From the IMG/VR virus record IMGVR_UViG_3300023175_000005, positions 62,001 through 126,000 of that record: a DNA stretch of 64,000 nucleotides, one strand, 5' to 3'. This document shows positions 13,479-33,347 of this stretch, piece by piece. Made by a program: the position numbers and the translations under genes. How positions within the stretch are numbered: position 1 is the first letter of the stretch; each line of letters begins with the position of its first letter. The notes under the pieces are model-generated. The model did not search any database, was not told the origin of the DNA, and saw only the letters and a program-made list of their open reading frames with translations.

Positions 13479-13553
13479 AAGGCTTATCTCCTATCAAGGT
13501 ACGGGTCAGGTCTATATAGACGCCCATGTTAACGCAATAGAAATTGCTAAAAG

Positions 13554-13580
13554 TATTTATCAAGGAAATTAATAGTGGTA
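13554..13580 (-). promoter_or_regulatory. T4-like late promoter (TAAATA) with an upstream TACCACT-ATT element
   Basis: gaTAAATAct about 75 nt upstream of the fibre gene start. Confidence 0.6.
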
Positions 13581-13584
13581 GTTT

Positions 13585-16500
13585 TTAGAAAGTACCACCA
13601 TCTATAGTATCTGTCCAAACTGGTGTAGCATCTGCGTCACTAGTTACTGTAAGTATTTGGAAACTGTTGCTTGCGTCTGCTGTGCCTGCGGCATCAGTAA
13701 CTTGTACAGGATCTGCTGTGTTTCCATATAGTATACCGTTTTCAGTAAATGTGCTTGCTCCAGTACCACCATATTGTACTTCAAGATCACTAGTTAAAAT
13801 AAGCGTTCCGATGTCAGCGTTTACAACAGTTATTTTATTATTAACTGCATCAATAATTTCAGTACTATCGTCTGCAAAAATACTACCAGTAAATCCTGCC
13901 GCATCAAGTATACCATCTACAACTAAGTTTGTTGTAAATGTTGAATTTAGTTCGCTGATTCTAAATTTTTCAGTTAGCAATCCATTATGCATGGTGCTAA
14001 TAATCATATCAAAGTCTTCACCACCGCCTGTTACATCTGTGCTAACAACATCAACTTGTGCTGCTGTTTCAAAGTTGTTTAGGAATGTTTCTAACTCGAA
14101 CTTCATACCAGTACCAGCACCAGAAGTAATTGCACCAGTGGTAGTATGGTGTGCAAGTGTTAACGGATATACAATATCATCTGCTGCGCTATCAGGTGCA
14201 TCTGTAATAAGTCTAATTGTATCTGGAGCATAAACAGTTTCGCCTCTAATTGTAAGTGTGCTTGTTCCTAAATGACCAATTTGAATATCACCGCCTATTG
14301 TGCCGCCGACATATAAGTTGCCACCTATACCCATGCCGCCTGTAACAACAACTGCTCCGCTTTCAGTACTTCTTGATTGTGTATCACTGTTAATTGTAAT
14401 ATCAACAGACTCGTCAACATCCAATTCACTTGCATTCAAATACATTCTCTTTGAACCGTCGGCGTAAAATTCTAACGTATCTTCGTCTGTTCCTGGGCCA
14501 GTTTCTGGTCTAATAAATGTATCTTGGTCAGCATCAATAGTACCAACTAATGAACTCCAGTTTACACCATTGTAGCCTTCATAAAACTGTAAGTCTGTAT
14601 TAAAGCGTACTTGACCAATTACTGGTACAGACGGACGAGCACTTGTGTCTCCTACCGGAACTTGAATACTCTTGTCACTATCAATAATAACAAAGTCGTT
14701 GTTAATCGTCAAAGTACCAGTATCTGCACCAATAACAATTGTAGTCGCTTCGCCCATTGCATTAACTGTTGTTACTGTTGTGTTTAGTAAGTTTACAGTT
14801 AATGAATCAGTTGTAACATTGGTAGTAGGATTTTCTCCTAATTTGATATCATCTTTAACAACTAGGCTGTTATTAATAGTTGTTGTACCAATCAAATCAC
14901 CAATGTTAATGTTTGCAGCGCCGCCCGCAAAGTTAACGGTATTAGCATTATCGTTAACTAGATTAAACTCACTTGCAGTAGTTGTCAAGTCTCCGCCATC
15001 GACTGCAATGTCTAGTTCAAAAGTAACATCGCCTTCAACTGTGCCACCCGTGATTTTATTTAGATAGTTGTTGCTTAGGAATTGTACCACAGCATTTTGT
15101 GTAGGTACAGTATTAATATCTGCTGTACCTGTACTTGCTATAAGATTTGTATTGTCACTAACTTCTTTTAATTCAACACCAACTGGAATACCAAATCTTT
15201 GGAAAGGACCAATGCTTGCAATACCTGTTAAATCAATTTGGTTAGCATTAAGTGTAATAGCACCTGTAAGTGCGTTAACTGCAAAGAAATTACCAACTCT
15301 AAAGTTACCAATTTGGTCAACAGTACCACCTGCAAACACTTTACCAGTATTAGACTCGACAATTTCGTTTTCAGCAATCGGTGAACCGCCAAAGAATGGA
15401 AGTGCGTTATAGGTAATACCTGCACCAACATATTCAAATGCATGACCTGAAGTTGACACAGTACTTACACGCTGCATGTTACCTAGTGTTCCCTTTGTTA
15501 CTGATAGAACACCTGGGAATAATGTAAGTTCTGCAACACCACCATATTCTAAGTTTAATAATCTAATTGCTTCATCTTCAATGTCTTGTGCTTTAAACAT
15601 GATCAATTGTCTGTCAGCATAGTCTGCCATAGATGCTAAACCTGCATAATTATGATCTTGTTCAATAGGAAGATATACTGTGTTTCCTGTTTCAGCAATT
15701 ACAGTAGTTTCAATAACTTCGGCAATTTTAGATACAAGCGTTTTTAGAATCAATCCTGCTGCTGCACTACCATTTGTACCATCTGTTTCTTGTAGTAATG
15801 TAGGTGTACCACTAGGTGTAATATCTATGTTTTGTGCAACATCGCTTAAAACTCTTGCTAGATGCTTATATGTAAATTCGGTAATATCTTGTTGGTCTGC
15901 ATTACCTTCTGATGCTGCACTTAAAATTGTGCCGCTGTAATAAGCTTCTGCTGCTCTGCGAGTTTGTTTGTTACCACCATACATCATATCATAAACTGCT
16001 GCATCAATAATGTAGTTTGTATCTCTTTTACACTTTTCTACATTATATCTAAAGCCAATGATATTTTGAGTAATATAATCAATTACTTGCTGCTGATATG
16101 TTGTGCTATTTGTAAGGACATTATCTGCTGCTTCTACAAGACTGCTACTGATCCAACTGTAATCTGGATCAGTATTTTGAGGAGTAGTACCTAGTCCTAA
16201 ACTGTCTGTAATAGCAAGGATTAAAATATTATAAAGATCATTTGCAACTTCACTTTCTGTTGAAGTGCCAAATGTTCCGCTTAAATCTTGTGTTTCACCG
16301 TTTCCAGGTTGTACAGCAATTGGAACACCTTCAATGATACTAACACTAATATCTCTCAAGTGTTCAATAGCATCAGCAGTTTGAAACTCTTGTCCAACAA
16401 TAGTAGAAACACCGTCATCAAAATATGCTCTAGTGCTTACTAGTATACTTCTGTTTCCGCCGTATAGCATATCATGTGACACACTGTCAATAATGTATTC

Positions 16501-19500
16501 ACTGTCTCTACGACATTTTGCTTCGTCGTAACTCAAACCATTTAAACTTGTGTTAATATAATCAATTACACTTTGTACAAGATCTGATTGAGAACTGTCG
16601 CCGCTTGCTAAAATTAAATCTCTTGAGTTTGTTAAGTTAGAAGCAACCCAAGTTAAATCGGGCTCATAAAGAGATGGAAGATTTTCTGTGCTTTCTTCTT
16701 GTAACACATCAACAATATAAGTTACTAAGCCTGCCAATTCATCCATTTCTGCTGAACTTGCTGGATTACCTGTAAGCGTTTGTCCTGCTCTGTTTTCTAT
16801 AATTATATCGTCAGCAATATCAATTAATTGTTGGTATGCAGCAATTGTTTCGTCTTTTTGTGATGCAGGAATTTGCGATGCAGTTCCTTCAAAATACGCT
16901 AATGCTGCTGTTCTTGTTGCAAAGTTTGTACCGTATTGTATGTCATGCGATACAGCATCAATGATATATCCTGTGTCTCTTTCGCACTTTGCTTGATCGT
17001 AAACTAAAGTTGGGAAACTTAAATTGATCCAAGCAATTAATTCACTAATAATGAACGTTCTGTTACTTTGTAATAGTGTTCTAGCATATGCTTTATTAAC
17101 ATCTGATCCAGGATCAGTAAATGTTAATGGATCAGCACTAAGGACACCATTTTGTAAAATATCAATAATTTCATCAAACAAGTCATTACATGCTGTTACG
17201 CTTGCACTATCTGCCGCAACAAGTGTTGCTACTTCTGTTCTTAGATATGTGATTGCTGCAACAGTTTCTGTTAATTGATCACTGATTACTAAAGAAGCAT
17301 TTGCATTATAATATGCCAGTCCTGCTTGTACACTGTTATAATTTGTACCTAGAACTAAGTCATAAGTTACAGCATCTAGAATTAAAGCAGTATCTCTTGC
17401 ACATTTTGCACTGTCATAAACAAAATAGTTGTTAGCAATATACTTAATTGTATCTTCAACTAGGAAATCTCTGTTTGCTTGTAATAATCTATTTGCATCA
17501 ATTAATTCTTGGCTTGCAGGTGTTGGTGCAGGGAATGTTCTACCTTCACTAGGCAATGCAGTTTGTGCGCCAAAGCCGCCATCTGGAACAGTAGTTAAGG
17601 TTTGATCTGCAAATTCGATTAAGTTTAGAATAATATCAAATCTGTCATTTACTCTTTCAACTGCAACACTGCTACCTGCTGCGCCTGCTGCTGCTAGTGT
17701 TTTTAAATATCTAATTGAAATAATAGTTGCAGGTTTTTGTGCAACATCAAAATATGTTGCTGTTGCTCTTTGATATGCTTGTCCTGCTTGAATACTATTG
17801 TGATTTGTGCCTAGTTTAACATCTCTTACAACAGCATCTAAAATAAGTTCTACATCTCTTTTACACTTTGTTCTATCATATGTAAAGTTTGGATATGTTG
17901 TAAGCAAATAACTTGTAATATTAGTTGCAAAATTATCTTGTGCTGCAAACAATGAACTTCTTGCTGCTTGCACATCTGCTGCTGCCCAAATAACACTTGG
18001 ATATTGTACTTCAGGTAAGTTTGTCAATGCACCTGTGTTAATTACTTCAATAATAATATCAATATAATCGTCTGCACGTTCTGCTTCAACACCTGTTGCA
18101 TTTGCTGCTGATGTATCTTGTACTAACAAGTTACCAGTAGATCTAAATACTGGATCTCCTTGCAAAATCTGTGTTGTAATTTCTTTTAATCTGCCATATG
18201 CTGCAATAGTAGCAGTAGTTTCGTCTGCTCCTAATTGACTTGCTGTTCCTACAAAATACGCTTGTGCTACGTCCCTAGTTGCATAGTTACCGCCATATAA
18301 GATATCGTAAACTAATCCGTCAACAATGTGACCTACATCTTTATAACATGCATCTTGATCATAATCTAATGAAGGATAGTTTTCGTCTACCCATTTAACT
18401 ATTTCTTCTTGAATAAAGTCTTTGTTGTTAACAAGTTGATCTCTTGCATTTTCTCTTGCTGCAATAACACCCGTCGGTGAAGGATATGTGTAATCGTCTG
18501 CACTTGTGCTATCACCTCTCGAAAGGATTTCGATAATCTCATCCATTGCATTGTTTACTCTGCTTGTAGCAGTTGAACTTGCTACAACATTAGGTAAAGC
18601 AAGCATTAGTGTTTTTAGATATTGGTATGCTGCAATAGTTTGTACTTTTTGTTTTTGGTATACAACACTTGCATTTGCACGAGCATATGCTCTACCTGCT
18701 GTAACACTTGAATAGTTTGTTCCTAAAGCAGTATCATATGCAACCGCAGTTGTAATTTGCCTAACATCTCTTTCGCACTTATCTTGATCATATGAAAGAT
18801 CTGTAAATTGGTCTGAAATATAATTTACAACTTCGTCAATAATAAAGTCTTTATTTTGAACAATATTATCTTTTGCAGCAATTACACCGCTGTCAATATT
18901 TGTAAGTTCGTTATAAACTACATCCGGTACCGCAGTACTATCGCCTTGTGTAATTGTATTTGTAATAATTGCAAAGTTTTCAATTATGTTATATCTATAG
19001 TCTATGTTAGCAGGATCTGTATCAGGAACACATTTTAGCATTTCGTCTCTTGCTGCTTCAATACCATATATTGTAGGTGCTAACTGTTGGTTAAGAACTT
19101 TTTGTGATGTTGCACGAAGATAACTTCTGCCTGCATTAATACTTTGATAGTTTGTGCCAAGTGCAGAATCTCCTGATACTGCATCAATAATTCTTTGTAT
19201 ATCTCTTCTACAAATTGTTTCATCATAAATGAATGGTCGTGTTGTAATTTCAGATGAAGTTACATAATATCTTGTTTCATCGCCTTCAAACGTTATAATA
19301 GAACCTGTCTGTGGAATATCACGTAAACTATCTACTTCAACTATTCTGTTTGTAATTAAGTTTACAGTACCTGTTGCAGGAACACTAAACCCACCGCCTG
19401 TAAATGTAATGTTAGGTATAAAATCATATCCACTACCCTGATTACTAATACTTACAGCAACAACTTTACCTGTTGCAGGATCAATACTTGCATTGCCTGT

Positions 19501-20571
19501 TGCTTGTACACCGCCTGGCGTAGTAGGAGGATCAATAGTTACAGAAGGTGCATTTGTATAGCCAGCACCTTGGTTATTAATAGTCACACTACCAACAACA
19601 GAATAATAGTCTTGTGTAGGTCTAGCAGTTGTAAATACTTTCTCAAATAATCCATCAGCAATAATTGCATAAGTACCAAAGTCACTAACAGAGTTCGAGA
19701 TCGAAAGATACCCGCCTGCGGTTGCTTGGAAACCAACTCTTGTAAAAACTGAGAAGCAACTAACAATCTGTGTATATCCTTCATTAAGTAGCCAAAAGCC
19801 AATACCACCTTGTGCAACTTGTGTAAACGCATCAGCAACAAAGGATCGTACAAGACTTCTCTGATCGTAGGCGGCACCGTCAACTTTCATACCGTTGCCG
19901 CCACCGTTGTCGTTTACACGTTTTTCAAGCGGTACATTAGGATCATCTATAATTGGTCTAGCACCTGCCGGTACACCTGGAATTTGTTCTGTTTGAAAAG
20001 GAACAAATTCAGTACCGTCGTTTAACCACGGACCATTCATGTTTGTACAGTTTTGTACATATGGTGAAACAGTTACAAGTGCACCTGGTCTAATTTCTGC
20101 ACACCAACCTGGATCTGCTAATCCTCTAAATGTAAGTTGAAACAAGTAACATGCACAATCCATATAAAAAATTGTTTCAGTATTATTGAGCGGCCAAATT
20201 TGACAGTTACGTAAACTATCACCTCTAACAGTCATACGTTCTTTTAACGTAATCGGATTATCTTCGTAATAGTCTCCTGGTGCAACTTTAATAGTTGATC
20301 CTGCTGGTGCTGCTTCAACAGCAGATTTAACTGTTCGTTTTGCACGATCAGGTCCTTGACCTAATCCATCATTTTCGTCACTACCTTGTAATGACACATA
20401 ATAGATTAGTGTATCAGTAGGACCACTTGAACTACCTGTAACTTTTAGATCACCGTTAATTTCAACAGTGCCGCTACCCGGATTAAGTTCAATTGTACCG
20501 TCACCTTTAATTATAAGTTGACGGTCTCCTATTTTCCTGTCGTGTAATATCTGCTGCTTTACATACTTCAT
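13585..20571 (-). CDS. Large virion structural/fibre protein (2328 aa) with eight helical C-x-R/K-D repeats
   Basis: N-terminal beta-helix-like domain paralogous to the 3367-aa fibre (GDYxExNP, SPYVQNC, QIVSCF); eight YxxxxCxRD-type repeats; shared VPVG...RP...GQVRFNT...EGY module; C-terminal IDGGTF. Confidence 0.8.
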   Translation of the reverse strand: MKYVKQQILHDRKIGDRQLIIKGDGTIELNPGSGTVEINGDLKVTGSSSGPTDTLIYYVSLQGSDENDGLGQGPDRAKRTVKSAVEAAPAGSTIKVAPGDYYEDNPITLKERMTVRGDSLRNCQIWPLNNTETIFYMDCACYLFQLTFRGLADPGWCAEIRPGALVTVSPYVQNCTNMNGPWLNDGTEFVPFQTEQIPGVPAGARPIIDDPNVPLEKRVNDNGGGNGMKVDGAAYDQRSLVRSFVADAFTQVAQGGIGFWLLNEGYTQIVSCFSVFTRVGFQATAGGYLSISNSVSDFGTYAIIADGLFEKVFTTARPTQDYYSVVGSVTINNQGAGYTNAPSVTIDPPTTPGGVQATGNASIDPATGKVVAVSISNQGSGYDFIPNITFTGGGFSVPATGTVNLITNRIVEVDSLRDIPQTGSIITFEGDETRYYVTSSEITTRPFIYDETICRRDIQRIIDAVSGDSALGTNYQSINAGRSYLRATSQKVLNQQLAPTIYGIEAARDEMLKCVPDTDPANIDYRYNIIENFAIITNTITQGDSTAVPDVVYNELTNIDSGVIAAKDNIVQNKDFIIDEVVNYISDQFTDLSYDQDKCERDVRQITTAVAYDTALGTNYSSVTAGRAYARANASVVYQKQKVQTIAAYQYLKTLMLALPNVVASSTATSRVNNAMDEIIEILSRGDSTSADDYTYPSPTGVIAARENARDQLVNNKDFIQEEIVKWVDENYPSLDYDQDACYKDVGHIVDGLVYDILYGGNYATRDVAQAYFVGTASQLGADETTATIAAYGRLKEITTQILQGDPVFRSTGNLLVQDTSAANATGVEAERADDYIDIIIEVINTGALTNLPEVQYPSVIWAAADVQAARSSLFAAQDNFATNITSYLLTTYPNFTYDRTKCKRDVELILDAVVRDVKLGTNHNSIQAGQAYQRATATYFDVAQKPATIISIRYLKTLAAAGAAGSSVAVERVNDRFDIILNLIEFADQTLTTVPDGGFGAQTALPSEGRTFPAPTPASQELIDANRLLQANRDFLVEDTIKYIANNYFVYDSAKCARDTALILDAVTYDLVLGTNYNSVQAGLAYYNANASLVISDQLTETVAAITYLRTEVATLVAADSASVTACNDLFDEIIDILQNGVLSADPLTFTDPGSDVNKAYARTLLQSNRTFIISELIAWINLSFPTLVYDQAKCERDTGYIIDAVSHDIQYGTNFATRTAALAYFEGTASQIPASQKDETIAAYQQLIDIADDIIIENRAGQTLTGNPASSAEMDELAGLVTYIVDVLQEESTENLPSLYEPDLTWVASNLTNSRDLILASGDSSQSDLVQSVIDYINTSLNGLSYDEAKCRRDSEYIIDSVSHDMLYGGNRSILVSTRAYFDDGVSTIVGQEFQTADAIEHLRDISVSIIEGVPIAVQPGNGETQDLSGTFGTSTESEVANDLYNILILAITDSLGLGTTPQNTDPDYSWISSSLVEAADNVLTNSTTYQQQVIDYITQNIIGFRYNVEKCKRDTNYIIDAAVYDMMYGGNKQTRRAAEAYYSGTILSAASEGNADQQDITEFTYKHLARVLSDVAQNIDITPSGTPTLLQETDGTNGSAAAGLILKTLVSKIAEVIETTVIAETGNTVYLPIEQDHNYAGLASMADYADRQLIMFKAQDIEDEAIRLLNLEYGGVAELTLFPGVLSVTKGTLGNMQRVSTVSTSGHAFEYVGAGITYNALPFFGGSPIAENEIVESNTGKVFAGGTVDQIGNFRVGNFFAVNALTGAITLNANQIDLTGIASIGPFQRFGIPVGVELKEVSDNTNLIASTGTADINTVPTQNAVVQFLSNNYLNKITGGTVEGDVTFELDIAVDGGDLTTTASEFNLVNDNANTVNFAGGAANINIGDLIGTTTINNSLVVKDDIKLGENPTTNVTTDSLTVNLLNTTVTTVNAMGEATTIVIGADTGTLTINNDFVIIDSDKSIQVPVGDTSARPSVPVIGQVRFNTDLQFYEGYNGVNWSSLVGTIDADQDTFIRPETGPGTDEDTLEFYADGSKRMYLNASELDVDESVDITINSDTQSRSTESGAVVVTGGMGIGGNLYVGGTIGGDIQIGHLGTSTLTIRGETVYAPDTIRLITDAPDSAADDIVYPLTLAHHTTTGAITSGAGTGMKFELETFLNNFETAAQVDVVSTDVTGGGEDFDMIISTMHNGLLTEKFRISELNSTFTTNLVVDGILDAAGFTGSIFADDSTEIIDAVNNKITVVNADIGTLILTSDLEVQYGGTGASTFTENGILYGNTADPVQVTDAAGTADASNSFQILTVTSDADATPVWTDTIDGGTF

Positions 20572-20913: not shown

Positions 20914-22239
20914 TTAAAAAATAATACTATAAAGCAGAGCTTTATTCCTGCTTATTAATTCGTCTTGTGTACCTAATTCGTTTATAAAATATAAACCTGT
21001 GCCGCCATCAGCTTCGTCTTTTGCATATATCTTTGTACCATCAGTAGGTGGTGTATCTTCTGTATCAGTTAGTGCAGGATCTATTAATTTAGGAAACAAC
21101 ATAGGTGTTAGTACTTGTACATCACCTAAATTATTACCTGATAATTTCAAATCACTATCAAGTCCAGATGCTGAAATGGTATTTTCATCTATGGTAACCA
21201 ATGCAATTTCTGCAGATGTTTCATAAAAGTATGCAATTTCACTACCGTCTACAGTAATTCTAACATTACTTAGAGATGTAACACCATCTAGTGTACTAAA
21301 TGCTTCAACTTTTGTTGTTCCATCTGGTTCAACAGCATTAATTCTATATTGCCAATTATATTTGTGATAATCTCTAACATAATCTTTTAAGAACTGCAAA
21401 TTAGGAATAGCATCTGGTTCATACCCTGGCCAATCTGCTCCTGACAATCTGTTAGAATTTGTAGGAACATTTTTTATTTCACTGCCGTCGTATTCAGCAA
21501 GGCGTTTTTCATAATCAAGTGTGCCTGATACAGAAACAACGCCGCCTAAATTGGATCCTGGTAACAAGTTAAGATCATTACCATCTTCAGTTTTAATGCT
21601 GCTTGTATAGATACCTAAGTATCCTGAACCTTCTAAACCAAACTTAAATGCACCTGCATTTGCTTCTAACACACCGTTAGTGTATGACAATAAGTTTTCA
21701 TCGTAAAACATAACAGCATTTGGCAATGTGCCTCTGTCCATTATGATACCAGAAATTTCATCGCCACCAATACCAGTTGCAATTACTCTTTGTATATTAC
21801 CATCACTTATGTATGCAATAAACCCTGATGTATCTACAGGAGTAGTTAATGCAAAGTCTGCAAATAATTCAACTGTAGTAGGATCAACAACATTTACATA
21901 GTAAGTGTTATTGTTTAATTCTACCATTCCTAAAACATTAGTAATAATTACTTCGCTACCATCAGTAAAACTGTGAGCATCTGATAATTCTACTTGTGCT
22001 GGGTTTGCTTGTGTTATACCAACAATGTCGTATAGTGTATTAGATTGATTGTTTAGTGTTAGTGTTTTATCACTTACAATTAATTCAGACGAAGTAATCG
22101 AAGTTTGAGAGCCGTTGACATCTAAATCACCATTGATAACAACAGTGCCGGAACCTACATTAATTTCAATAGTTCCGCCATCGTTAATTGTTAACTTATA
22201 ATCGTCGACTCCATACTGTTCGATTCTAGACGCTGTCAT
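20914..22239 (-). CDS. Virion/tail protein containing an E1 FCCH-like beta domain
   Basis: ITQANPAQVELSDAHSFTDGSEVIITNVLGMVELNNNTYYV motif; N-terminus resembles that of the 2328-aa protein. Confidence 0.6.
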   Translation of the reverse strand: MTASRIEQYGVDDYKLTINDGGTIEINVGSGTVVINGDLDVNGSQTSITSSELIVSDKTLTLNNQSNTLYDIVGITQANPAQVELSDAHSFTDGSEVIITNVLGMVELNNNTYYVNVVDPTTVELFADFALTTPVDTSGFIAYISDGNIQRVIATGIGGDEISGIIMDRGTLPNAVMFYDENLLSYTNGVLEANAGAFKFGLEGSGYLGIYTSSIKTEDGNDLNLLPGSNLGGVVSVSGTLDYEKRLAEYDGSEIKNVPTNSNRLSGADWPGYEPDAIPNLQFLKDYVRDYHKYNWQYRINAVEPDGTTKVEAFSTLDGVTSLSNVRITVDGSEIAYFYETSAEIALVTIDENTISASGLDSDLKLSGNNLGDVQVLTPMLFPKLIDPALTDTEDTPPTDGTKIYAKDEADGGTGLYFINELGTQDELISRNKALLYSIIF

Positions 22240-22255
22240 TTATATCTCCAACTTA

Positions 22256-22702
22256 TTACTGTCTTGGTAGAGATACACTTAATACTGCGTTTGGTACACC
22301 TGAATCTTCTCTTGCATCTGGATGATTACCAATTTCGTAGATTACATTGTCTGCTTTGTCACCATCCGGCGGTGTTGCAGTACCTTTTGCAGTGTTTTCA
22401 ATTTGCACTGTTCTGTTACGAAGTTGTGTTACTTGATAAACTGTTGAATCAGAACCTGTTGCATCAATTCTAAATGTACCTTCTGGCATACTTCCGTTGC
22501 CTTCTGTTGTTAATTTTAGAATTTCACCTGCTGTTGGATCTGCATTATCACTATCTAAGCGTACCCAGAATTGATTAGCACCTTTTACTTTGTAAATGTG
22601 TGCTGCTGTGGTTGCTTCTGAACCACCTGTAAAATAGTGACGGCTTACAGCAATTCTACCTGAACCGTATCCTATTTTTGATTTATTAATTGGACGTCCC
22701 AT
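22256..22702 (-). CDS. Probable structural protein (148 aa, MGRP start)
   Basis: Own late promoter, AAGGAG RBS, first gene of the fibre operon. Confidence 0.65.
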   Translation of the reverse strand: MGRPINKSKIGYGSGRIAVSRHYFTGGSEATTAAHIYKVKGANQFWVRLDSDNADPTAGEILKLTTEGNGSMPEGTFRIDATGSDSTVYQVTQLRNRTVQIENTAKGTATPPDGDKADNVIYEIGNHPDAREDSGVPNAVLSVSLPRQ

Positions 22703-22792
22703 TTGTTTCTCCTTTTTGACGTTCTAAGTCTACGCGGTTGGTCTTCCGCATAAGTCCTCATCTAGAGGCTCTCCTCTTGACACAAGTATTTA
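22703..22792 (-). promoter_or_regulatory. Late promoter (ggaTAAATA) followed by a structured 5' leader
   Basis: Hairpins AGAGG-AGAG-CCUCU and UAUGCGG-AAGACCAA-CCGCGUA lie before the RBS. Confidence 0.55.
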
Positions 22793-22823
22793 TCCAAAAG
22801 ATTAAAATGGGTTATTATGTCAT

Positions 22824-22857
22824 AAAAAAAGGCCTGCAATTATGTTGCAGACCTTTT
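22824..22857 (-). terminator. Intrinsic terminator, possibly bidirectional
   Basis: GGUCUGCAA/UUGCAGGCC stem followed by U7. Confidence 0.75.
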
Positions 22858-22867
22858 CTATAATATT

Positions 22868-23078
22868 GATAGGTTGGACTACTGATTACCAACAACCGCA
22901 CTATGCCCCATCAGGCTCAAAACAGCACGGAACCTCACAATAGAATGGTTAATCCTACTTTTCCTGCAATGCTTTGTCTCCAAAGTCTTACAGCGCCACC
23001 ACAGCGTGTGAGTCAAGTTAATGCCTGGGTAAGCATCGTTTCCTTGCACTATCTAACTTGGACCGTCGTCTTCGTTAT
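22868..23078 (-). ncRNA. Putative ~210-nt highly structured non-coding RNA
   Basis: Bounded by a sigma70 promoter and a terminator; GC-rich relative to flanks; at least 8 helices whose G-U pairs work only on the minus strand; GAGA tetraloop. Confidence 0.7.
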
Positions 23079-23084
23079 GTTTAT

Positions 23085-23112
23085 AATATAGCATCTAAAA
23101 AAAGTTTGTCAA
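23085..23112 (-). promoter_or_regulatory. Sigma70-type promoter driving the ncRNA
   Basis: TTGACA-N16-TATATT with an extended -10 TG, or N18-TATTAT. Confidence 0.65.
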
Positions 23113-23321
23113 CGATAATCTTGAACTTTTTTTTGAATTTTTTCAATTTTTGTTGCAATTTTTCTGTCTTTGACATCATCTGCAAAATATTGTACTCTGT
23201 CACCAATTTTTAGATCATGTAAACGTGGATCAAACACAATATCTTTACGTGTGGCTTTCCATCTATCTGGTCTAATAAATCCATGCATTTTTAATTTCTT
23301 ATATACTGTACCTGTTTCCAT
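23109..23321 (-). CDS. Cold-shock-domain-like (OB-fold) nucleic-acid-binding protein
   Basis: METGTV...HGFIRPD...KDIVF...LKIGDRVQY...IATKI follows the CspA pattern with divergent RNP motifs; 70 aa; GGAG RBS. Confidence 0.6.
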   Translation of the reverse strand: METGTVYKKLKMHGFIRPDRWKATRKDIVFDPRLHDLKIGDRVQYFADDVKDRKIATKIEKIQKKVQDYR

Positions 23322-23344
23322 TAGTATCTCCTTACAGTATTTAC

Positions 23345-23370
23345 AAAAAAATAGGCCCCGTAGGGCCTAT
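23345..23370 (-). terminator. Intrinsic terminator after the major capsid gene
   Basis: AUAGGCCC-UACG-GGGCCUAU (UNCG tetraloop) followed by a U run. Confidence 0.85.
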
Positions 23371-23393
23371 CTTAAAATTATATAATCTAAAAC

Positions 23394-24572
23394 TTACGCG
23401 AAGCTTAGGTTTGCTGTTGTTACACCAACTAGACCTAGGTAATCCGCTGCATTGCCTAAAGACGATGCTGCGTTTGATAGTTCTACATAACCGTAACGTG
23501 TCATGAATGACACTGTTGGTTCGAATGTTGATGGATCTAGTACAACACCACTGCTCATTAATGGAATGTATGGGCAGTAGAACGCTGCTGCGTCTGATTC
23601 TGATGTACCTTTGTAGCCAACTAGAACATTGTCACTACCTGCATATGTGTTTACATATACTTTCATACTGTTGTTTAGTGTACCAACCATTTTTGTGTTA
23701 GTTGGTGCTTCAAATGTACCTTCTGTTGTACGAGCAAATGCAGATGTTGTTGCACTTTGTAGTAGTGTTAGTACTGTTGGTGATACAACTGCCCAGTTAC
23801 CTGCGCCTCTGCGTGTACGCTGTGCAATCAAGTTTGCAACTCTGTTGATTTGAACTGCTAGTGCAGCATGTTCGTCACCAACAAATGTTGCTGTACCTGA
23901 TACAGCAGCTTGGTCGTATGTTTCAACCGCTGAACCTGCAAGAGTTGTTAGGCTGCGGATGATTTCCTGATCGATCTCAGCAGTAATCTCTTGAGCAAGT
24001 GCTGCCATGATTTCTGCTTCTACGTCGATGCCGTGCTGTGACTGAGCGTCTTGTGCTGACTCAAATGTCCAACGTGCGCTTAGTTTACGTGACTTTGCTT
24101 CGACTGTTTGCTTTAAGATCTGAATGCTTAGTCTGTTACCAGCAGTACCTTCTAAAGCGCCTGTTGCAGCCGCTGTATCTGAAGATGCTGTGTTACCTGA
24201 ATAACCTTCTGCAATCTTAAATGGTGATAGTGCTTCTTCACCTGCCACAGTGTTTCCACCTGCGGAACCTGTGAATGCGTCACTATAACGTACACGTAAT
24301 GTGTGAATTTGACCGACTGGACCGGTCATTGGCTGAACGCCTACCAATTCGTTAGCAATAACGGTTGGCATAACACGTCTGATCACAGGAAGGATCACAC
24401 GGTTTAGTGTTGCGATGTTACCAGCAGCAGTTGCGCCTGAAGTTGCACTCTCTGACAAATACTTGCGTGTATTTTCAAGTGTTGCCGCCATTACGGCTTT
24501 CTTGTTACCATTTAGGCCTTCAAGTAGTGCACCTTTTGTCTCCTGCCAGCGACTTTCTAGTAGTTCTGACAT
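23394..24572 (-). CDS. gp23: T4-like major capsid protein
   Basis: LVGVQPMTGPVGQIHTLR, AKSRKLSARWTFESAQD, EITAEIDQEII, AFYCPYIPL and FMTRYG motifs. Confidence 0.97.
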   Translation of the reverse strand: MSELLESRWQETKGALLEGLNGNKKAVMAATLENTRKYLSESATSGATAAGNIATLNRVILPVIRRVMPTVIANELVGVQPMTGPVGQIHTLRVRYSDAFTGSAGGNTVAGEEALSPFKIAEGYSGNTASSDTAAATGALEGTAGNRLSIQILKQTVEAKSRKLSARWTFESAQDAQSQHGIDVEAEIMAALAQEITAEIDQEIIRSLTTLAGSAVETYDQAAVSGTATFVGDEHAALAVQINRVANLIAQRTRRGAGNWAVVSPTVLTLLQSATTSAFARTTEGTFEAPTNTKMVGTLNNSMKVYVNTYAGSDNVLVGYKGTSESDAAAFYCPYIPLMSSGVVLDPSTFEPTVSFMTRYGYVELSNAASSLGNAADYLGLVGVTTANLSFA

Positions 24573-33284: not shown

Positions 33285-33347
33285 TGCGCACATTATATTA
33301 ATTCATATATATACGTGTAGTATTTATCCGGAGAAAAAATACATGCA
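33285..33347. promoter_or_regulatory. Overlapping late promoters on opposite strands for gp26 (+) and the tape measure gene (-)
   Basis: Plus: TGCGCAC-ATT...TATATA (33285/33306). Minus: TGCATGT-ATT...TAAATA (33347/33326). Confidence 0.55.

What the first reader, a model, noticed from the sequence alone, without database searches (positions are those of the whole stretch)
22824..23112. Stand-alone ~210-nt ornate ncRNA gene in the middle of the late structural region
Seen: sigma70 promoter, no credible ORF, then a terminator. Helices: CAAGUUA/UAACUUG; AUGCUU-ACCC-AGGCAU; a four-way junction closed by CUCACA/UGUGAG holding CGCUG/UGGCG, CUGUAA/UUGCAG (capped by CUUUG-GAGA-CAAAG) and AGUAGGAU-UAACC-AUUCUAUU; CCGUGCUGU/AUAGUGCGG; GUUGG/CCAAC. 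Possible pseudoknots are GAUAG with the 3' CUAUC and loop UAACC with GGUUG. The G-U pairs become A-C mismatches on the other strand. Inference: an early-expressed structural, decoy or catalytic RNA. Size and some words (CGAUGC..CAGGCA..AAC..CAC..GUAAG..AGCAU) loosely recall raiA- or manA-type motif RNAs, but I cannot assign it.
Basis: partly seen in the sequence, partly recalled or inferred. Interest (0 to 1): 0.72.

Follow-up and report, generated by a model that had tools for sequence, protein, structure and literature searches.

The report
Stand-alone manA-family phage RNA gene
An uncultured marine jumbo phage carries a promoter-to-terminator gene for an abundant, roughly 250-nt folded RNA of the manA family, which has been filed as a leader "switch" and was recently shown to self-assemble into cages in vitro; here it appears as a free RNA in natural samples.

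Summary
On the minus strand a near-consensus sigma-70 promoter (23112-23085) drives a structured RNA (core 23076-22863) that ends at an intrinsic terminator (22857-22824). The RNA is not unassignable. It is a divergent member of the manA family (RF01745): 50.7 bits, E 6e-12, just under the 55.2-bit cut-off, which is why a standard Rfam scan reports nothing. A model built only from this clade finds classical cyanophage manA RNAs in return. About 100 viral contigs carry it. Across 46 distinct sequences 96.6% of pair cells are paired, and 29 of 63 base pairs show compensatory changes. Salt-marsh metatranscriptomes hold a discrete high-depth contig (23068-22827, depth 275) against flanks of 2-12. 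Promoter and terminator are conserved. The downstream gene keeps its own promoter-like motif and leader in relatives that lack the RNA. The same RNA also sits beside tRNA arrays. Two loop-loop complementarities (L5:L7, L8:L9) covary independently. By my mapping, these are the intermolecular kissing loops that build manA pentamers and cages in a 2026 cryo-EM preprint. Best reading: a trans-acting, probably self-assembling RNA rather than a cis riboswitch. Its biological role is unknown.

The parts
23107..23112 (-). -35 hexamer TTGACA; it overlaps the TGA stop of the upstream 70-aa ORF
   Evidence: TTGAC(A/C/T) is kept in 30 of 31 distinct upstream stretches of relatives while the spacer sequence varies.
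23085..23093 (-). Extended -10, TGcTATATT
   Evidence: The TG extension is present in 30/31 distinct relatives, always at the same distance from the RNA body.
23076..23078 (-). Predicted transcription start (A-U-A, 7-9 nt after the -10). Inferred, not mapped.
   Evidence: Spacing rule for sigma-70 promoters (established knowledge). The abundant RNA-seq contig starts 8-10 nt further in, at 23068.
22863..23076 (-). manA-family RNA core (Rfam RF01745, model positions 1-192)
   Evidence: 50.7 bits, E 6e-12 to 5e-13, gathering score 55.2. The reciprocal search is.
23061..23070 (-). P1, the 5' hairpin GAC-GACG-GUC (GACG loop as in the family consensus)
   Evidence: It is invariant in 35 variants. 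L232 has CAC/GUG, one compensatory change seen by eye.
23049..23053 (-). P2 closing stem, 5' strand GAUAG
   Evidence: It pairs with 22872-22868 and is 99.4% paired.
22868..22872 (-). P2 closing stem, 3' strand CUAUC
23014..23046 (-). P3 hairpin (CAAG/CUUG plus GAUGCUU-ACCC-AGGCAUU)
   Evidence: One pair covaries: CG 29 / AU 16.
22934..23012 (-). Four-way junction domain. P4 is CUCACA/UGUGAG and encloses P5 (23006-22994), P6 (22993-22964) and P7 (22958-22940).
   Evidence: Pairs with compensatory change: P4 3 of 6, P6 9 of 11, P7 4 of 7. Coordinates checked.
22998..23001 (-). L5 loop UGGU, complementary to L7
   Evidence: UGGU:ACCA or UAGU:ACUA in 48 variants, never A.C.
22977..22980 (-). L6 GNRA tetraloop (GAGA; GUGA in two variants)
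   Evidence: The family consensus has GAAA here.
22946..22949 (-). L7 loop ACCA, complementary to L5
22896..22930 (-). P8 long hairpin; its loop strand L8 is CUGAU (22914-22910)
   Evidence: 6 of 9 outer pairs covary.
22873..22893 (-). P9 hairpin GUUGG/CCAAC with an 11-nt loop; L9 is AUCAG (22886-22882)
   Evidence: L8:L9 forms 5/5 pairs in 48/48 variants, with two pairs covarying.
22824..22857 (-). Intrinsic terminator: A4, a 9-bp GC-rich stem, then U7
   Evidence: A hairpin plus T-run follows the RNA in 30/37 distinct contexts. The stems covary between GGUCU and AGGCC.
22827..23068 (-). Stretch covered by the discrete high-depth metatranscriptome contig
   Evidence: X15 record 18 has depth 275 and an Illumina adapter directly after 23068. 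Flanks are 11.7 (downstream gene) and 2.4-0 (upstream).
22785..22793 (-). Boundary feature, not part of the RNA: conserved ATAAATACT (like the T4 late promoter TATAAATA), which starts the downstream gene's own leader
   Evidence: It is kept in relatives that lack the RNA (L007/8, L014/15). It is not enriched in the window as such (3 found, 1.6 expected).
22700..22770 (-). Boundary feature: freshwater-2 motif (RF02980) forming the 5' leader of the 148-aa gene (22702-22256)
   Evidence: 46.5 bits here and 54-61 bits (above the cut-off of 49.9) in relatives.

Best explanation
This is an independent RNA gene of an uncultured marine/coastal jumbo phage. Host-type (sigma-70) RNA polymerase starts near 23077 and stops at the intrinsic terminator near 22827. 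The product is an abundant, roughly 245-250-nt RNA that is a divergent member of the manA family.

The RNA folds into a closing stem that holds one hairpin (P3), a four-way junction (P4-P7) and two 3' hairpins (P8, P9). It most likely acts in trans as a free RNA rather than as a leader of the next gene.

Its most likely mode of action is homo-oligomerisation. The heterotypic loop pairs L5:L7 (UGGU:ACCA) and L8:L9 (CUGAU:AUCAG) would join neighbouring copies head to tail into a pentamer-based closed particle, with the GNRA loop L6 as a further contact. This is what cryo-EM reports for classical manA RNAs in vitro.

Shown here: the gene structure, family membership, fold, loop complementarities, and the abundant discrete transcript. 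Inferred: the start site, early timing, that the loop pairs are intermolecular in this RNA, and any cellular role (scaffold, sequestration or decoy).
For: Family. RF01745 gives a full-length match at 50.7 bits and E 6e-12. Syntenic relatives score 37-56 bits, and one (L004) passes the cut-off. Model R1, built only from 8 sequences of this clade, finds classical manA RNAs over their full length at E 1e-14 to 1e-6.

Fold. In 46 distinct sequences, 96.6% of cells are paired and 29 of 63 pairs show compensatory change. Slid controls give 32-43% paired and 1-8 such pairs. A structure-blind MAFFT alignment gives 96.1% paired and 14 of 46 pairs. Conserved G.U pairs, the fold energies and the Rfam hit all put the RNA on the minus strand.

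Own transcription unit. The promoter hexamers and TG extension are kept in 30/31 distinct upstream stretches while spacers vary. A terminator is present in 30/37 contexts, with covarying stems.

Transcript. X15 has a 242-nt contig at depth 275 that ends in adapter at 23068. Its flanks are 11.7 and 2.4-0. X14 shows 113 against 3-10. X17 shows 985, from a sister variant, against 30 on the downstream side and 192 on the upstream side, only a fivefold contrast there. The RNA's 31-mers occur in at least 14 metatranscriptomes from at least 10 studies.

Not tied to the next gene. Relatives without the RNA keep the ATAAATACT motif, the freshwater-2 leader and the gene. Nearly the same RNA lies about 250 nt upstream of a tRNA-Trp/Pro/Met array in L059/L076/L090 and L052/L077. 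The terminator shares no nucleotides with the fold, and its distance varies from 29 to 149 nt.

Assembly. L8:L9 forms 5/5 pairs in 48/48 variants. The variable L5:L7 pair is G-C in 16, A-U in 31, G.U in 1 and never A.C. All four combinations of the two loop-pair types occur. Classical manA RNAs covary at L8:L9 as well (CUGU:ACAG versus AUGU:ACAU). The preprint 10.64898/2026.07.01.735769 reports manA decamers and a 60-mer cage built from pentamers held by intermolecular L5-L7' and L8-L9' kissing loops.
Against: - No experiment or structure exists for this subfamily. Covariation cannot tell intermolecular from intramolecular loop pairing.
- My mapping of the preprint's P/L numbers onto this RNA rests on counting helices and on L6 being the GNRA loop. 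The figures could not be read.
- This RNA scores far below classical manA (about 50 against 150-197 bits). It lacks the conserved CUGAAUAA-CUU junction stretch and has a different P8, so its assembly geometry may differ.
- Assemblies were made in vitro at high RNA and Mg concentrations.
- Logan contigs carry no strand and break at graph branch points. The 22827 boundary overlaps its neighbour contig by k-1 bases, so the 3' end is not mapped to the base. One run (X1) has a single flat contig across the region.
- The RNA does lie directly upstream of, and co-oriented with, a gene, as a cis-regulator would.
- The core's fold energy is not exceptional (z = -1.31).
Confidence: 0.55

Rival explanations
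1. It is a trans-acting free RNA that works as a monomer, for example as a decoy or sponge for a host or phage protein or a small-molecule binder. In this reading L5:L7 and L8:L9 are intramolecular tertiary contacts that lock the fold.
For: All the evidence for a stand-alone abundant RNA applies equally. Weinberg 2010 drew a possible intramolecular pseudoknot in manA. Covariation is blind to the difference between intra- and intermolecular pairing.
Against: In the only structures of family members, these loop pairs are intermolecular. P8 is about 14 bp long with an internal loop, and P9 is 5 bp, with 2 nt between them. Their loops therefore sit at very different heights, which makes an intramolecular kiss awkward (inference).
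Confidence: 0.25
2. It is a cis-acting riboswitch or leader, the original manA hypothesis. The fold is an aptamer, the hairpin plus U7 is its expression platform, and regulated read-through gives sigma-70-driven expression of the 148-aa gene.
For: Rfam and Weinberg 2010 file manA as a cis-regulatory riboswitch candidate found in 5' UTRs. The RNA is co-oriented with the next gene and 160 nt upstream of it. Low-level coverage continues downstream (11.7 against 275). Terminator-like hairpins are enriched after classical manA RNAs: 22/61 against a 4.3% background.
Against: - The terminator does not overlap the fold. Both form together in the MFE, separated by unpaired A/U-rich linker.
- The terminator's distance (29-149 nt) and sequence vary, with about 100 nt of unrelated spacer in one subgroup. 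No conserved anti-terminator was found. The P6/terminator similarity in the window is absent from relatives.
- The gene keeps its own promoter-like motif and freshwater-2 leader when the RNA is absent (L007/8, L014/15) or half deleted (L036).
- The same RNA precedes tRNA arrays elsewhere.
Confidence: 0.15
3. It is not a functional RNA gene: either a small protein-coding gene, or a decaying remnant or chance fold between two structural genes.
For: A 56-codon sense ORF (23049-22879) and a 62-aa antisense ORF exist in the window. The core fold energy is unremarkable. One relative (L036) has lost the 3' half.
Against: The sense ORF carries 2-8 stops in most relatives, including near-identical ones. 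Length differences are not multiples of three. Substitutions are concentrated in compensatory pairs. The promoter and terminator are conserved. Transcripts are abundant. The covariance-model matches are significant in both directions.
Confidence: 0.03

Closest known systems
manA RNA motif (Rfam RF01745; Weinberg et al. 2010, PMC2864571), classical form in T4-like cyanophages, marine metagenomes and two gamma-proteobacteria
   Same: It has the same architecture in the same order: a 5' hairpin with a GACG loop, a closing stem, a hairpin, a four-way junction, and two 3' hairpins. The arm loops of the junction are GUGGUG, GNRA and UAACCA, and the last hairpin loop is GGUA..A..A(A/G)UCC. The L8:L9 complementarity is shared. 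Covariance-model matches are significant and full-length in both directions. The habitat is marine/coastal and the carrier is a phage.
   Different: It scores 37-56 bits against 150-197 for classical members and falls under the gathering cut-off in this window. The conserved CUGAAUAA-CUU junction stretch is replaced, P8 differs, and P6 and P7 are longer. The carrier is a non-cyanophage jumbo phage, with a capsid protein 65-70% identical to those of Vibrio phage 2.275.O, Sinorhizobium phage Phosso and Serratia phage BF. Those three cultured genomes have no manA match. It lies in the head-gene module, not ahead of a metabolic gene, and has its own promoter and terminator.
manA homo-oligomers and the 60-mer cage (bioRxiv 10.64898/2026.07.01.735769, July 2026)
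   Same: The elements named as assembly interfaces are all present here and under selection: L5:L7 and L8:L9 loop complementarity and a GNRA L6.
   Different: That work is in vitro only and uses classical manA sequences, and it still calls manA a putative 5'-UTR element. The window adds a natural free transcript but no structural data. Whether this subfamily forms decamers, 60-mers or nothing is untested. The numbering correspondence is my inference.
Other RNA-only multimers of bacteria and phages: ROOL, GOLLD, OLE and raiA, as cited in that preprint and from my own knowledge of the 2024-25 cryo-EM papers
   Same: These are ornate, highly conserved, often phage-borne non-coding RNAs of unknown function that multimerise through loop-loop contacts. 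GOLLD and ROOL are often found near tRNA genes (my knowledge), as this RNA is in some contigs.
   Different: Those RNAs are several hundred nucleotides long and unrelated in sequence. No Rfam match to raiA, ROOL or GOLLD was found here at E<=10.
Transcription-terminating riboswitches
   Same: The linear order is the same: promoter, structured domain, hairpin plus U-tract, then gene.
   Different: There is no overlap or conserved alternative pairing between the fold and the terminator. The spacer is variable, the gene has its own promoter-like motif, and the element also occurs away from any mRNA.

Membership tests
manA RNA (RF01745) | Statistically significant, full-length match to the family covariance model, confirmed reciprocally | tested here: met
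   50.7 bits, model positions 1-192 of 192, E 6e-12 and 5e-13 on the whole record. The clade-only model R1 hits 23 classical manA loci, 20 of them over full length (model 1-212) at E 1e-14 to 2e-6.
manA RNA (RF01745) | Score at or above Rfam's curated gathering cut-off (55.2 bits); an operational rule rather than a structural one | tested here: inconclusive
   The window copy scores 50.7, which is below the cut-off, so the default scan of the window returns nothing. Syntenic copies score 55.6 (L004, passes), 54.9, 53.2, 42.7 and 37.2. Classical members score 150-197.
manA RNA (RF01745) | Secondary-structure architecture: closing stem around one hairpin, a four-way junction and two 3' hairpins | tested here: met
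   The MFE fold equals the consensus architecture. 96.6% of cells are paired and 29/63 pairs are compensatory.
manA RNA (RF01745) | Conserved loop sequences: GACG, GUGGUG, GNRA, UAACCA, GGUA..A..AAUCC | tested here: met
   The window has GACG, GUGGUG, GAGA, UAACCA and GGUAAUCAGUAGUCC, with one A-to-G difference in the last. Sister groups change L5 and L7 together.
manA RNA (RF01745) | Conserved junction stretch CUGAAUAA-CUU between the closing stem and the first hairpin (a consensus feature, not known to be required) | tested here: not met
   The window has GUGCAAGGAAACG there. cmscan aligns it with a 4-nt deletion and few identities. This is the main reason I call it a divergent subfamily rather than a canonical member.
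manA RNA (RF01745) | Loop-loop complementarity of the two 3' hairpins (the 'pseudoknot?' of Weinberg 2010; that it is the preprint's L8-L9 is my mapping) | tested here: met
   5/5 pairs in 48/48 variants, with two covarying pairs. The classical set covaries at the same place.
manA RNA (RF01745) | Location as a 5' UTR of the regulated gene (Rfam type Cis-reg) | tested here: not met
   A terminator and a conserved promoter-like motif plus the freshwater-2 leader separate it from the next gene. There is alternative tRNA-array context, and the transcript is discrete.
manA RNA (RF01745) | Homo-oligomerisation into pentamer-based closed particles (preprint, in vitro) | not testable with these tools
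   Complex prediction refuses RNA-only jobs. Only the interface complementarities could be checked.
Riboswitch (generic) | An expression platform whose structure is mutually exclusive with the aptamer | tested here: not met
   The fold and the terminator coexist in the MFE with a linker between them. The distance is 29-149 nt and the sequence is not conserved. No conserved anti-terminator was seen.
Riboswitch (generic) | Specific ligand binding | not testable with these tools
   This needs in-line probing, ITC or termination assays.
   No raiA match among the 24 matches listed at E<=10 for 22600-23400.

The most novel reading that the evidence does not exclude
Phages make manA-type RNAs as free, highly expressed molecules that assemble inside infected cells into pentamer-based RNA particles or cages. 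The covarying loop pairs would act as lineage-specific 'assembly codes'; all four combinations exist, so some variants would be mutually orthogonal. On this reading the 16-year-old 'riboswitch candidate' label for the whole family is wrong. In this jumbo phage the gene's position directly after the major capsid gene might even hint at a role linked to the head or to packaging. That last point is pure speculation, because relatives place the gene in tRNA arrays.
Probability: 0.3. Interest if true: 0.85.

Novelty: new variant of a known kind. Interest (0 to 1): 0.62.

Why it matters
manA has been an orphan 'riboswitch candidate' since 2010. In 2026 it was shown to form the first natural RNA-only icosahedral cage, but only in vitro, and it is still described as a 5'-UTR element.

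This locus supplies the missing biological context. It is a divergent subfamily that standard annotation misses. It is deployed as a promoter-to-terminator gene, is seen as a discrete abundant RNA in many coastal and marine metatranscriptomes, and moves between genomic contexts, including tRNA arrays.

A free, abundant RNA is what a 10- to 60-subunit assembly would require. A leader tethered to an mRNA would fit that poorly.

The natural variants also provide ready-made compensatory loop mutants, with four combinations of two kissing-loop pairs. These make the question of whether the cage is real and specific directly testable. They also extend the family from cyanophages to jumbo phages whose capsid relatives infect proteobacteria.

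Tried and rejected
- A default Rfam scan of the whole window found nothing. The hit appears only below the gathering score.
- blastn of the locus against 50,697 phage records found no match.
- The cultured capsid relatives (Vibrio 2.275.O, Serratia BF, Sinorhizobium Phosso) have no manA match, so there is no host clue from them.
- The exact 32-nt leader has no hit in 185,579 prokaryote genomes, so no prophage or host assignment is possible. The window has no tRNA.
- The flanking proteins stay unknown. The 70-aa and 148-aa products have no Pfam or PHROG match. The Atlas hits are under 0.82 and uninformative. The 148-aa protein is not similar to the gene that follows the capsid gene in Serratia phage BF.
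- The plain MAFFT alignment mis-registers P4, P5, P7 and P8 between subgroups, so RNAalifold recovered only part of the fold. I therefore built a model from the window's own subgroup and realigned. This biases the alignment toward the structure, so I also report the MAFFT-based counts.
- The ATAAATACT 'late promoter' motif is not over-represented in the window (3 found, 1.6 expected). Its standing rests on positional conservation among relatives.
- An anti-terminator idea, P6 3' arm UUGCAG against terminator CUGCAA, holds only in the window's own variant and was dropped.
- The contig boundary at 22827 was first read as the 3' end. I downgraded it after noting the 30-nt (k-1) overlap with the neighbouring contig.
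Full report
**What is there.** The genes around the finding all run on the minus strand: prohead protease (26307-25684), a 362-aa scaffold-like protein, the major capsid protein (24572-23394, phrog_138, E 2e-102), a 70-aa ORF (23321-23109), and then the feature. After it come a 148-aa ORF (22702-22256), a 441-aa ORF and a 2328-aa ORF. The window is part of a 256.6-kb IMG/VR virus record estimated 72% complete. Its capsid protein is 65-70% identical to those of 350-470-kb jumbo phages of Vibrio, Sinorhizobium, Serratia, Yersinia, Erwinia and Xanthomonas.

**Promoter, terminator and coding potential.** On the minus strand, TTGACA (23112-23107), 16 nt and TGcTATATT (23093-23085) make an 11/12 promoter with an extended -10. 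The hairpin AAAAGGUCUGCAAC-AUA-AUUGCAGGCC plus U7 (22857-22824) closes the unit. The tool's terminator scan listed that hairpin only in its + strand reading. No ORF survives comparison: the 56-codon sense ORF has 2-8 stops in most relatives, even close ones.

**Identity.** A default Rfam scan of the window returns nothing. A sensitive scan of 22600-23400 gives one strong match: manA (RF01745), minus strand 23076-22863, model positions 1-192 of 192, 50.7 bits against a gathering score of 55.2, E 6e-12. On the whole virus record the E-value is 5e-13, and it is the only copy.

- Classical manA RNAs that I fetched from viral contigs score 150-197 bits, so this is a distant subfamily.
- Homology holds in reverse. 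A covariance model built only from eight sequences of the window's own subgroup finds classical manA RNAs over their full length at E 1e-14 to 1e-6.
- The main sequence difference is the junction between the closing stem and the first hairpin. The family's conserved CUGAAUAA-CUU is replaced.

**Relatives and fold.** Searching viral contigs with the downstream 148-aa protein gave 15 loci. The RNA sits at the same place in those with 70-100% protein identity and is missing in two lineages. Searching with the RNA's conserved 32-nt leader gave 74 contigs. Searching with its 3' motif gave 24 more. Together these make 48 distinct full-length variants.

- On the model-based alignment of 46 distinct rows, 96.6% of pair cells are standard pairs and 29 of 63 pairs show changes on both sides. 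When the partners are slid by 1-3 columns, 32-43% are paired and 1-8 pairs show such changes. None of 500 column shuffles reaches the observed covariation score.
- That alignment is fitted to the structure, so I repeated the count on a plain MAFFT alignment for the helices that stay in register. It gives 96.1% paired and 14 of 46 pairs compensatory.
- The single-sequence MFE of the 212-nt core reproduces the same architecture at -62.5 kcal/mol. Its z-score is only -1.31, so thermodynamics is not the evidence. The opposite strand folds to -43.3 kcal/mol with z = +0.59.

Three long-range proposals need correction.

- GAUAG/CUAUC is the family's ordinary closing stem.
- CAAGUUA/UAACUUG is conserved in sequence but shows no covariation and is mismatched in 6 of 35 variants at its only variable position. 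The consensus instead uses the second CAAG (23046-23043) with CUUG.
- UAACC:GGUUG fails in 19 of 35 variants.

**A transcription unit of its own.** In 31 distinct upstream stretches, 30 keep at least 10/12 promoter matches and the TG extension at a fixed distance from the RNA, while the spacers differ. A hairpin plus T-run follows the RNA in 30 of 37 distinct downstream contexts, and by eye in most of the rest. The stems covary between the conserved GGUCU and AGGCC ends. The T-run lies 29-40 nt after the fold in most variants but 70-149 nt in others, with about 100 nt of unrelated spacer in one subgroup. In the window, fold and terminator share no nucleotides and form together.

**Transcripts.** The locus is held by salt-marsh metatranscriptomes. 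Logan contigs of four of them were laid on 22200-23800.

- In X15 a 261-nt contig of depth 275 covers 22827-23068 and then continues into Illumina adapter (AGATCGGAAGAGCACACGT). The contig over the 148-aa gene has depth 11.7. The 70-aa ORF has 2.4, and 23280-23441 has none.
- X14 shows 113 against 3-10.
- X17 shows 985, with adapter at 23062. Its loose end identifies the expressed molecule as a sister variant with the other P8 type.
- X1 has one flat contig and is uninformative.

The adapter shows that many fragments end at 23068, which is 8-10 nt inside the predicted start (about 23077). That is what second-strand synthesis loss or 5' processing would give; which of the two applies is not known. 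The adapter is the Read-1 read-through type placed after + strand sequence. In a dUTP-stranded library that means a minus-strand RNA. This is my inference, because the library protocol is not stated.

One caution: the 22827 boundary overlaps the neighbouring contig by exactly 30 nt (k-1) and a variant contig starts there too. It is therefore a graph junction. The depth falls 24-fold across the terminator, but the 3' end is not mapped to the base.

A second index search with the RNA alone found 60-100% of its 31-mers in at least 14 metatranscriptomes from at least 10 studies, covering salt marsh, marine, seawater and biofilm samples.

**Independence from the next gene.** Between the terminator and the 148-aa gene lie a conserved ATAAATACT (22793-22785, resembling the T4 late promoter TATAAATA) and a freshwater-2 motif (RF02980, 22770-22700). 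The motif scores 46.5 bits here and 54-61 bits, above its cut-off, in relatives.

- Both are retained in L007/L008 and L014/L015, which lack the RNA, and in L036, where the 3' half of the RNA and its terminator are deleted.
- In L059/L076/L090 (the window's subgroup; the top scorers against the subgroup model, 263.6 bits vs 261.0 for the window copy) and in L052/L077 (another subgroup), the gene does not precede the 148-aa gene. It lies about 250 nt upstream of a tRNA-Trp/Pro/Met array on the same strand.
- Classical manA RNAs are also found next to tRNAs in several contigs. They are followed by terminator-like hairpins in 22 of 61 cases, against 4.3% of random windows.

None of this fits a regulator dedicated to one mRNA.

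**Mechanism.** A July 2026 preprint (10.64898/2026.07.01.735769) reports cryo-EM structures of classical manA RNAs. They form decamers, octamers and a 60-subunit T=1 cage, all built from pentamers. The pentamers are held by intermolecular kissing loops L5-L7' and L8-L9', or in another variant by L6-P6' GNRA-receptor, L5-L7' and L3-L8'. The preprint has no in-vivo data and still describes manA as a putative 5'-UTR element.

Numbering helices 5' to 3' makes L6 the GNRA loop, which fits their naming. On that mapping the window's RNA has L5 = UGGU (23001-22998), L7 = ACCA (22949-22946), L8 = CUGAU (22914-22910) and L9 = AUCAG (22886-22882).

- Both pairs are complementary in essentially every variant: 99.4% and 100% of cells, with three covarying pairs.
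- Over 48 variants, L8:L9 forms 5/5 pairs in all of them.
- The variable L5:L7 pair is G-C 16 times, A-U 31 times, G.U once and never A.C.
- All four combinations of the two loop-pair types occur. Each pair is therefore maintained on its own, not by linkage.
- Classical manA RNAs covary at L8:L9 too.

Covariation cannot say whether the contacts are within or between molecules. Two points favour the intermolecular reading: the published structures, and the unequal lengths of P8 and P9. A free, abundant RNA is also what a multi-subunit particle needs.

I therefore commit to a trans-acting, self-assembling RNA as the most likely mechanism (0.55). The rivals are a monomeric trans-acting RNA (0.25), a riboswitch (0.15), and a non-functional or coding element (0.03). 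The cellular role of such a particle is unknown.

**Novelty and score.** The family is known, and so, as of 2026, is its in-vitro assembly. What is new:

- a sub-threshold subfamily in jumbo phages outside the cyanophages;
- its organisation as a stand-alone gene;
- direct evidence of a discrete abundant transcript in nature;
- its mobility between contexts;
- independent covariation of both putative assembly interfaces.

I rate it a new variant of a known kind, with interest 0.62.

Noticed in passing
window 22700-22770 (-), with ATAAATACT at 22785-22793: A freshwater-2 motif (RF02980, 46.5 bits; 54-61 bits in relatives) forms the leader of the 148-aa gene, just after a conserved motif resembling a T4 late promoter. 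The same ATAAATACT also precedes genes at 13552-13560 and 33319-33327 on the coding strand. freshwater-2 may simply be the 5' UTR of a highly expressed late gene of this phage group.
   Followed up: partly
L007:2050-2370 (+) and the identical L008: In a relative that lacks the manA-type RNA, the same slot upstream of the 148-aa homologue holds about 300 nt of other non-coding sequence ending in a strong terminator. It folds to -94.5 kcal/mol with z = -3.5 and has no Rfam match at E<=0.001. It may be a different ncRNA occupying the same site.
   Followed up: partly
L059:2926-3420 (+), and likewise L052, L076, L077, L090: Here the manA-type RNA is followed by a possible 19-codon ORF with an RBS, a terminator, a long perfect hairpin (ACUACACUA...UAGUGUAGU) and then a tRNA-Trp/Pro/Met array. 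This looks like an ncRNA/tRNA island in these jumbo phages.
   Followed up: partly
L036:4197-4355 (+): A natural deletion variant. The RNA stops inside P6 and is fused directly to the ATAAATACT motif and freshwater-2 leader, so P7-P9, the closing stem's 3' strand and the terminator are gone. Either the RNA is dispensable in that lineage or this is an assembly artefact.
   Followed up: no
L096-L175 (classical manA loci), e.g. L102, L103, L109, L118, L130, L148, L171: Classical cyanophage-type manA RNAs often lie within 5-50 nt of tRNA genes on the same strand. 22 of 61 are followed by a hairpin plus T-run, against a 4.3% background. This questions the 'Cis-reg' label for the whole family.
   Followed up: partly
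window 20914-22239 (-): The 441-aa ORF two genes downstream has an E1_FCCH domain match (PF16190, 34.5 bits, above its cut-off). This domain recurs in Atlas clusters of phage proteins. The protein's role in this structural module is unknown.
   Followed up: no
window 13585-20571 (-): A 2328-aa ORF lies in the same gene string. It was not analysed.
   Followed up: no
window 23342-23396 (-): A strong terminator hairpin (AUAGGCCCUACGGGGCCUAU plus a U-tract) lies right after the capsid gene. It gives a weak, sub-threshold sbrA match (27 bits), which is just terminator resemblance. In X15 coverage drops to zero after it, so the capsid mRNA does not run into the RNA gene.
   Followed up: partly
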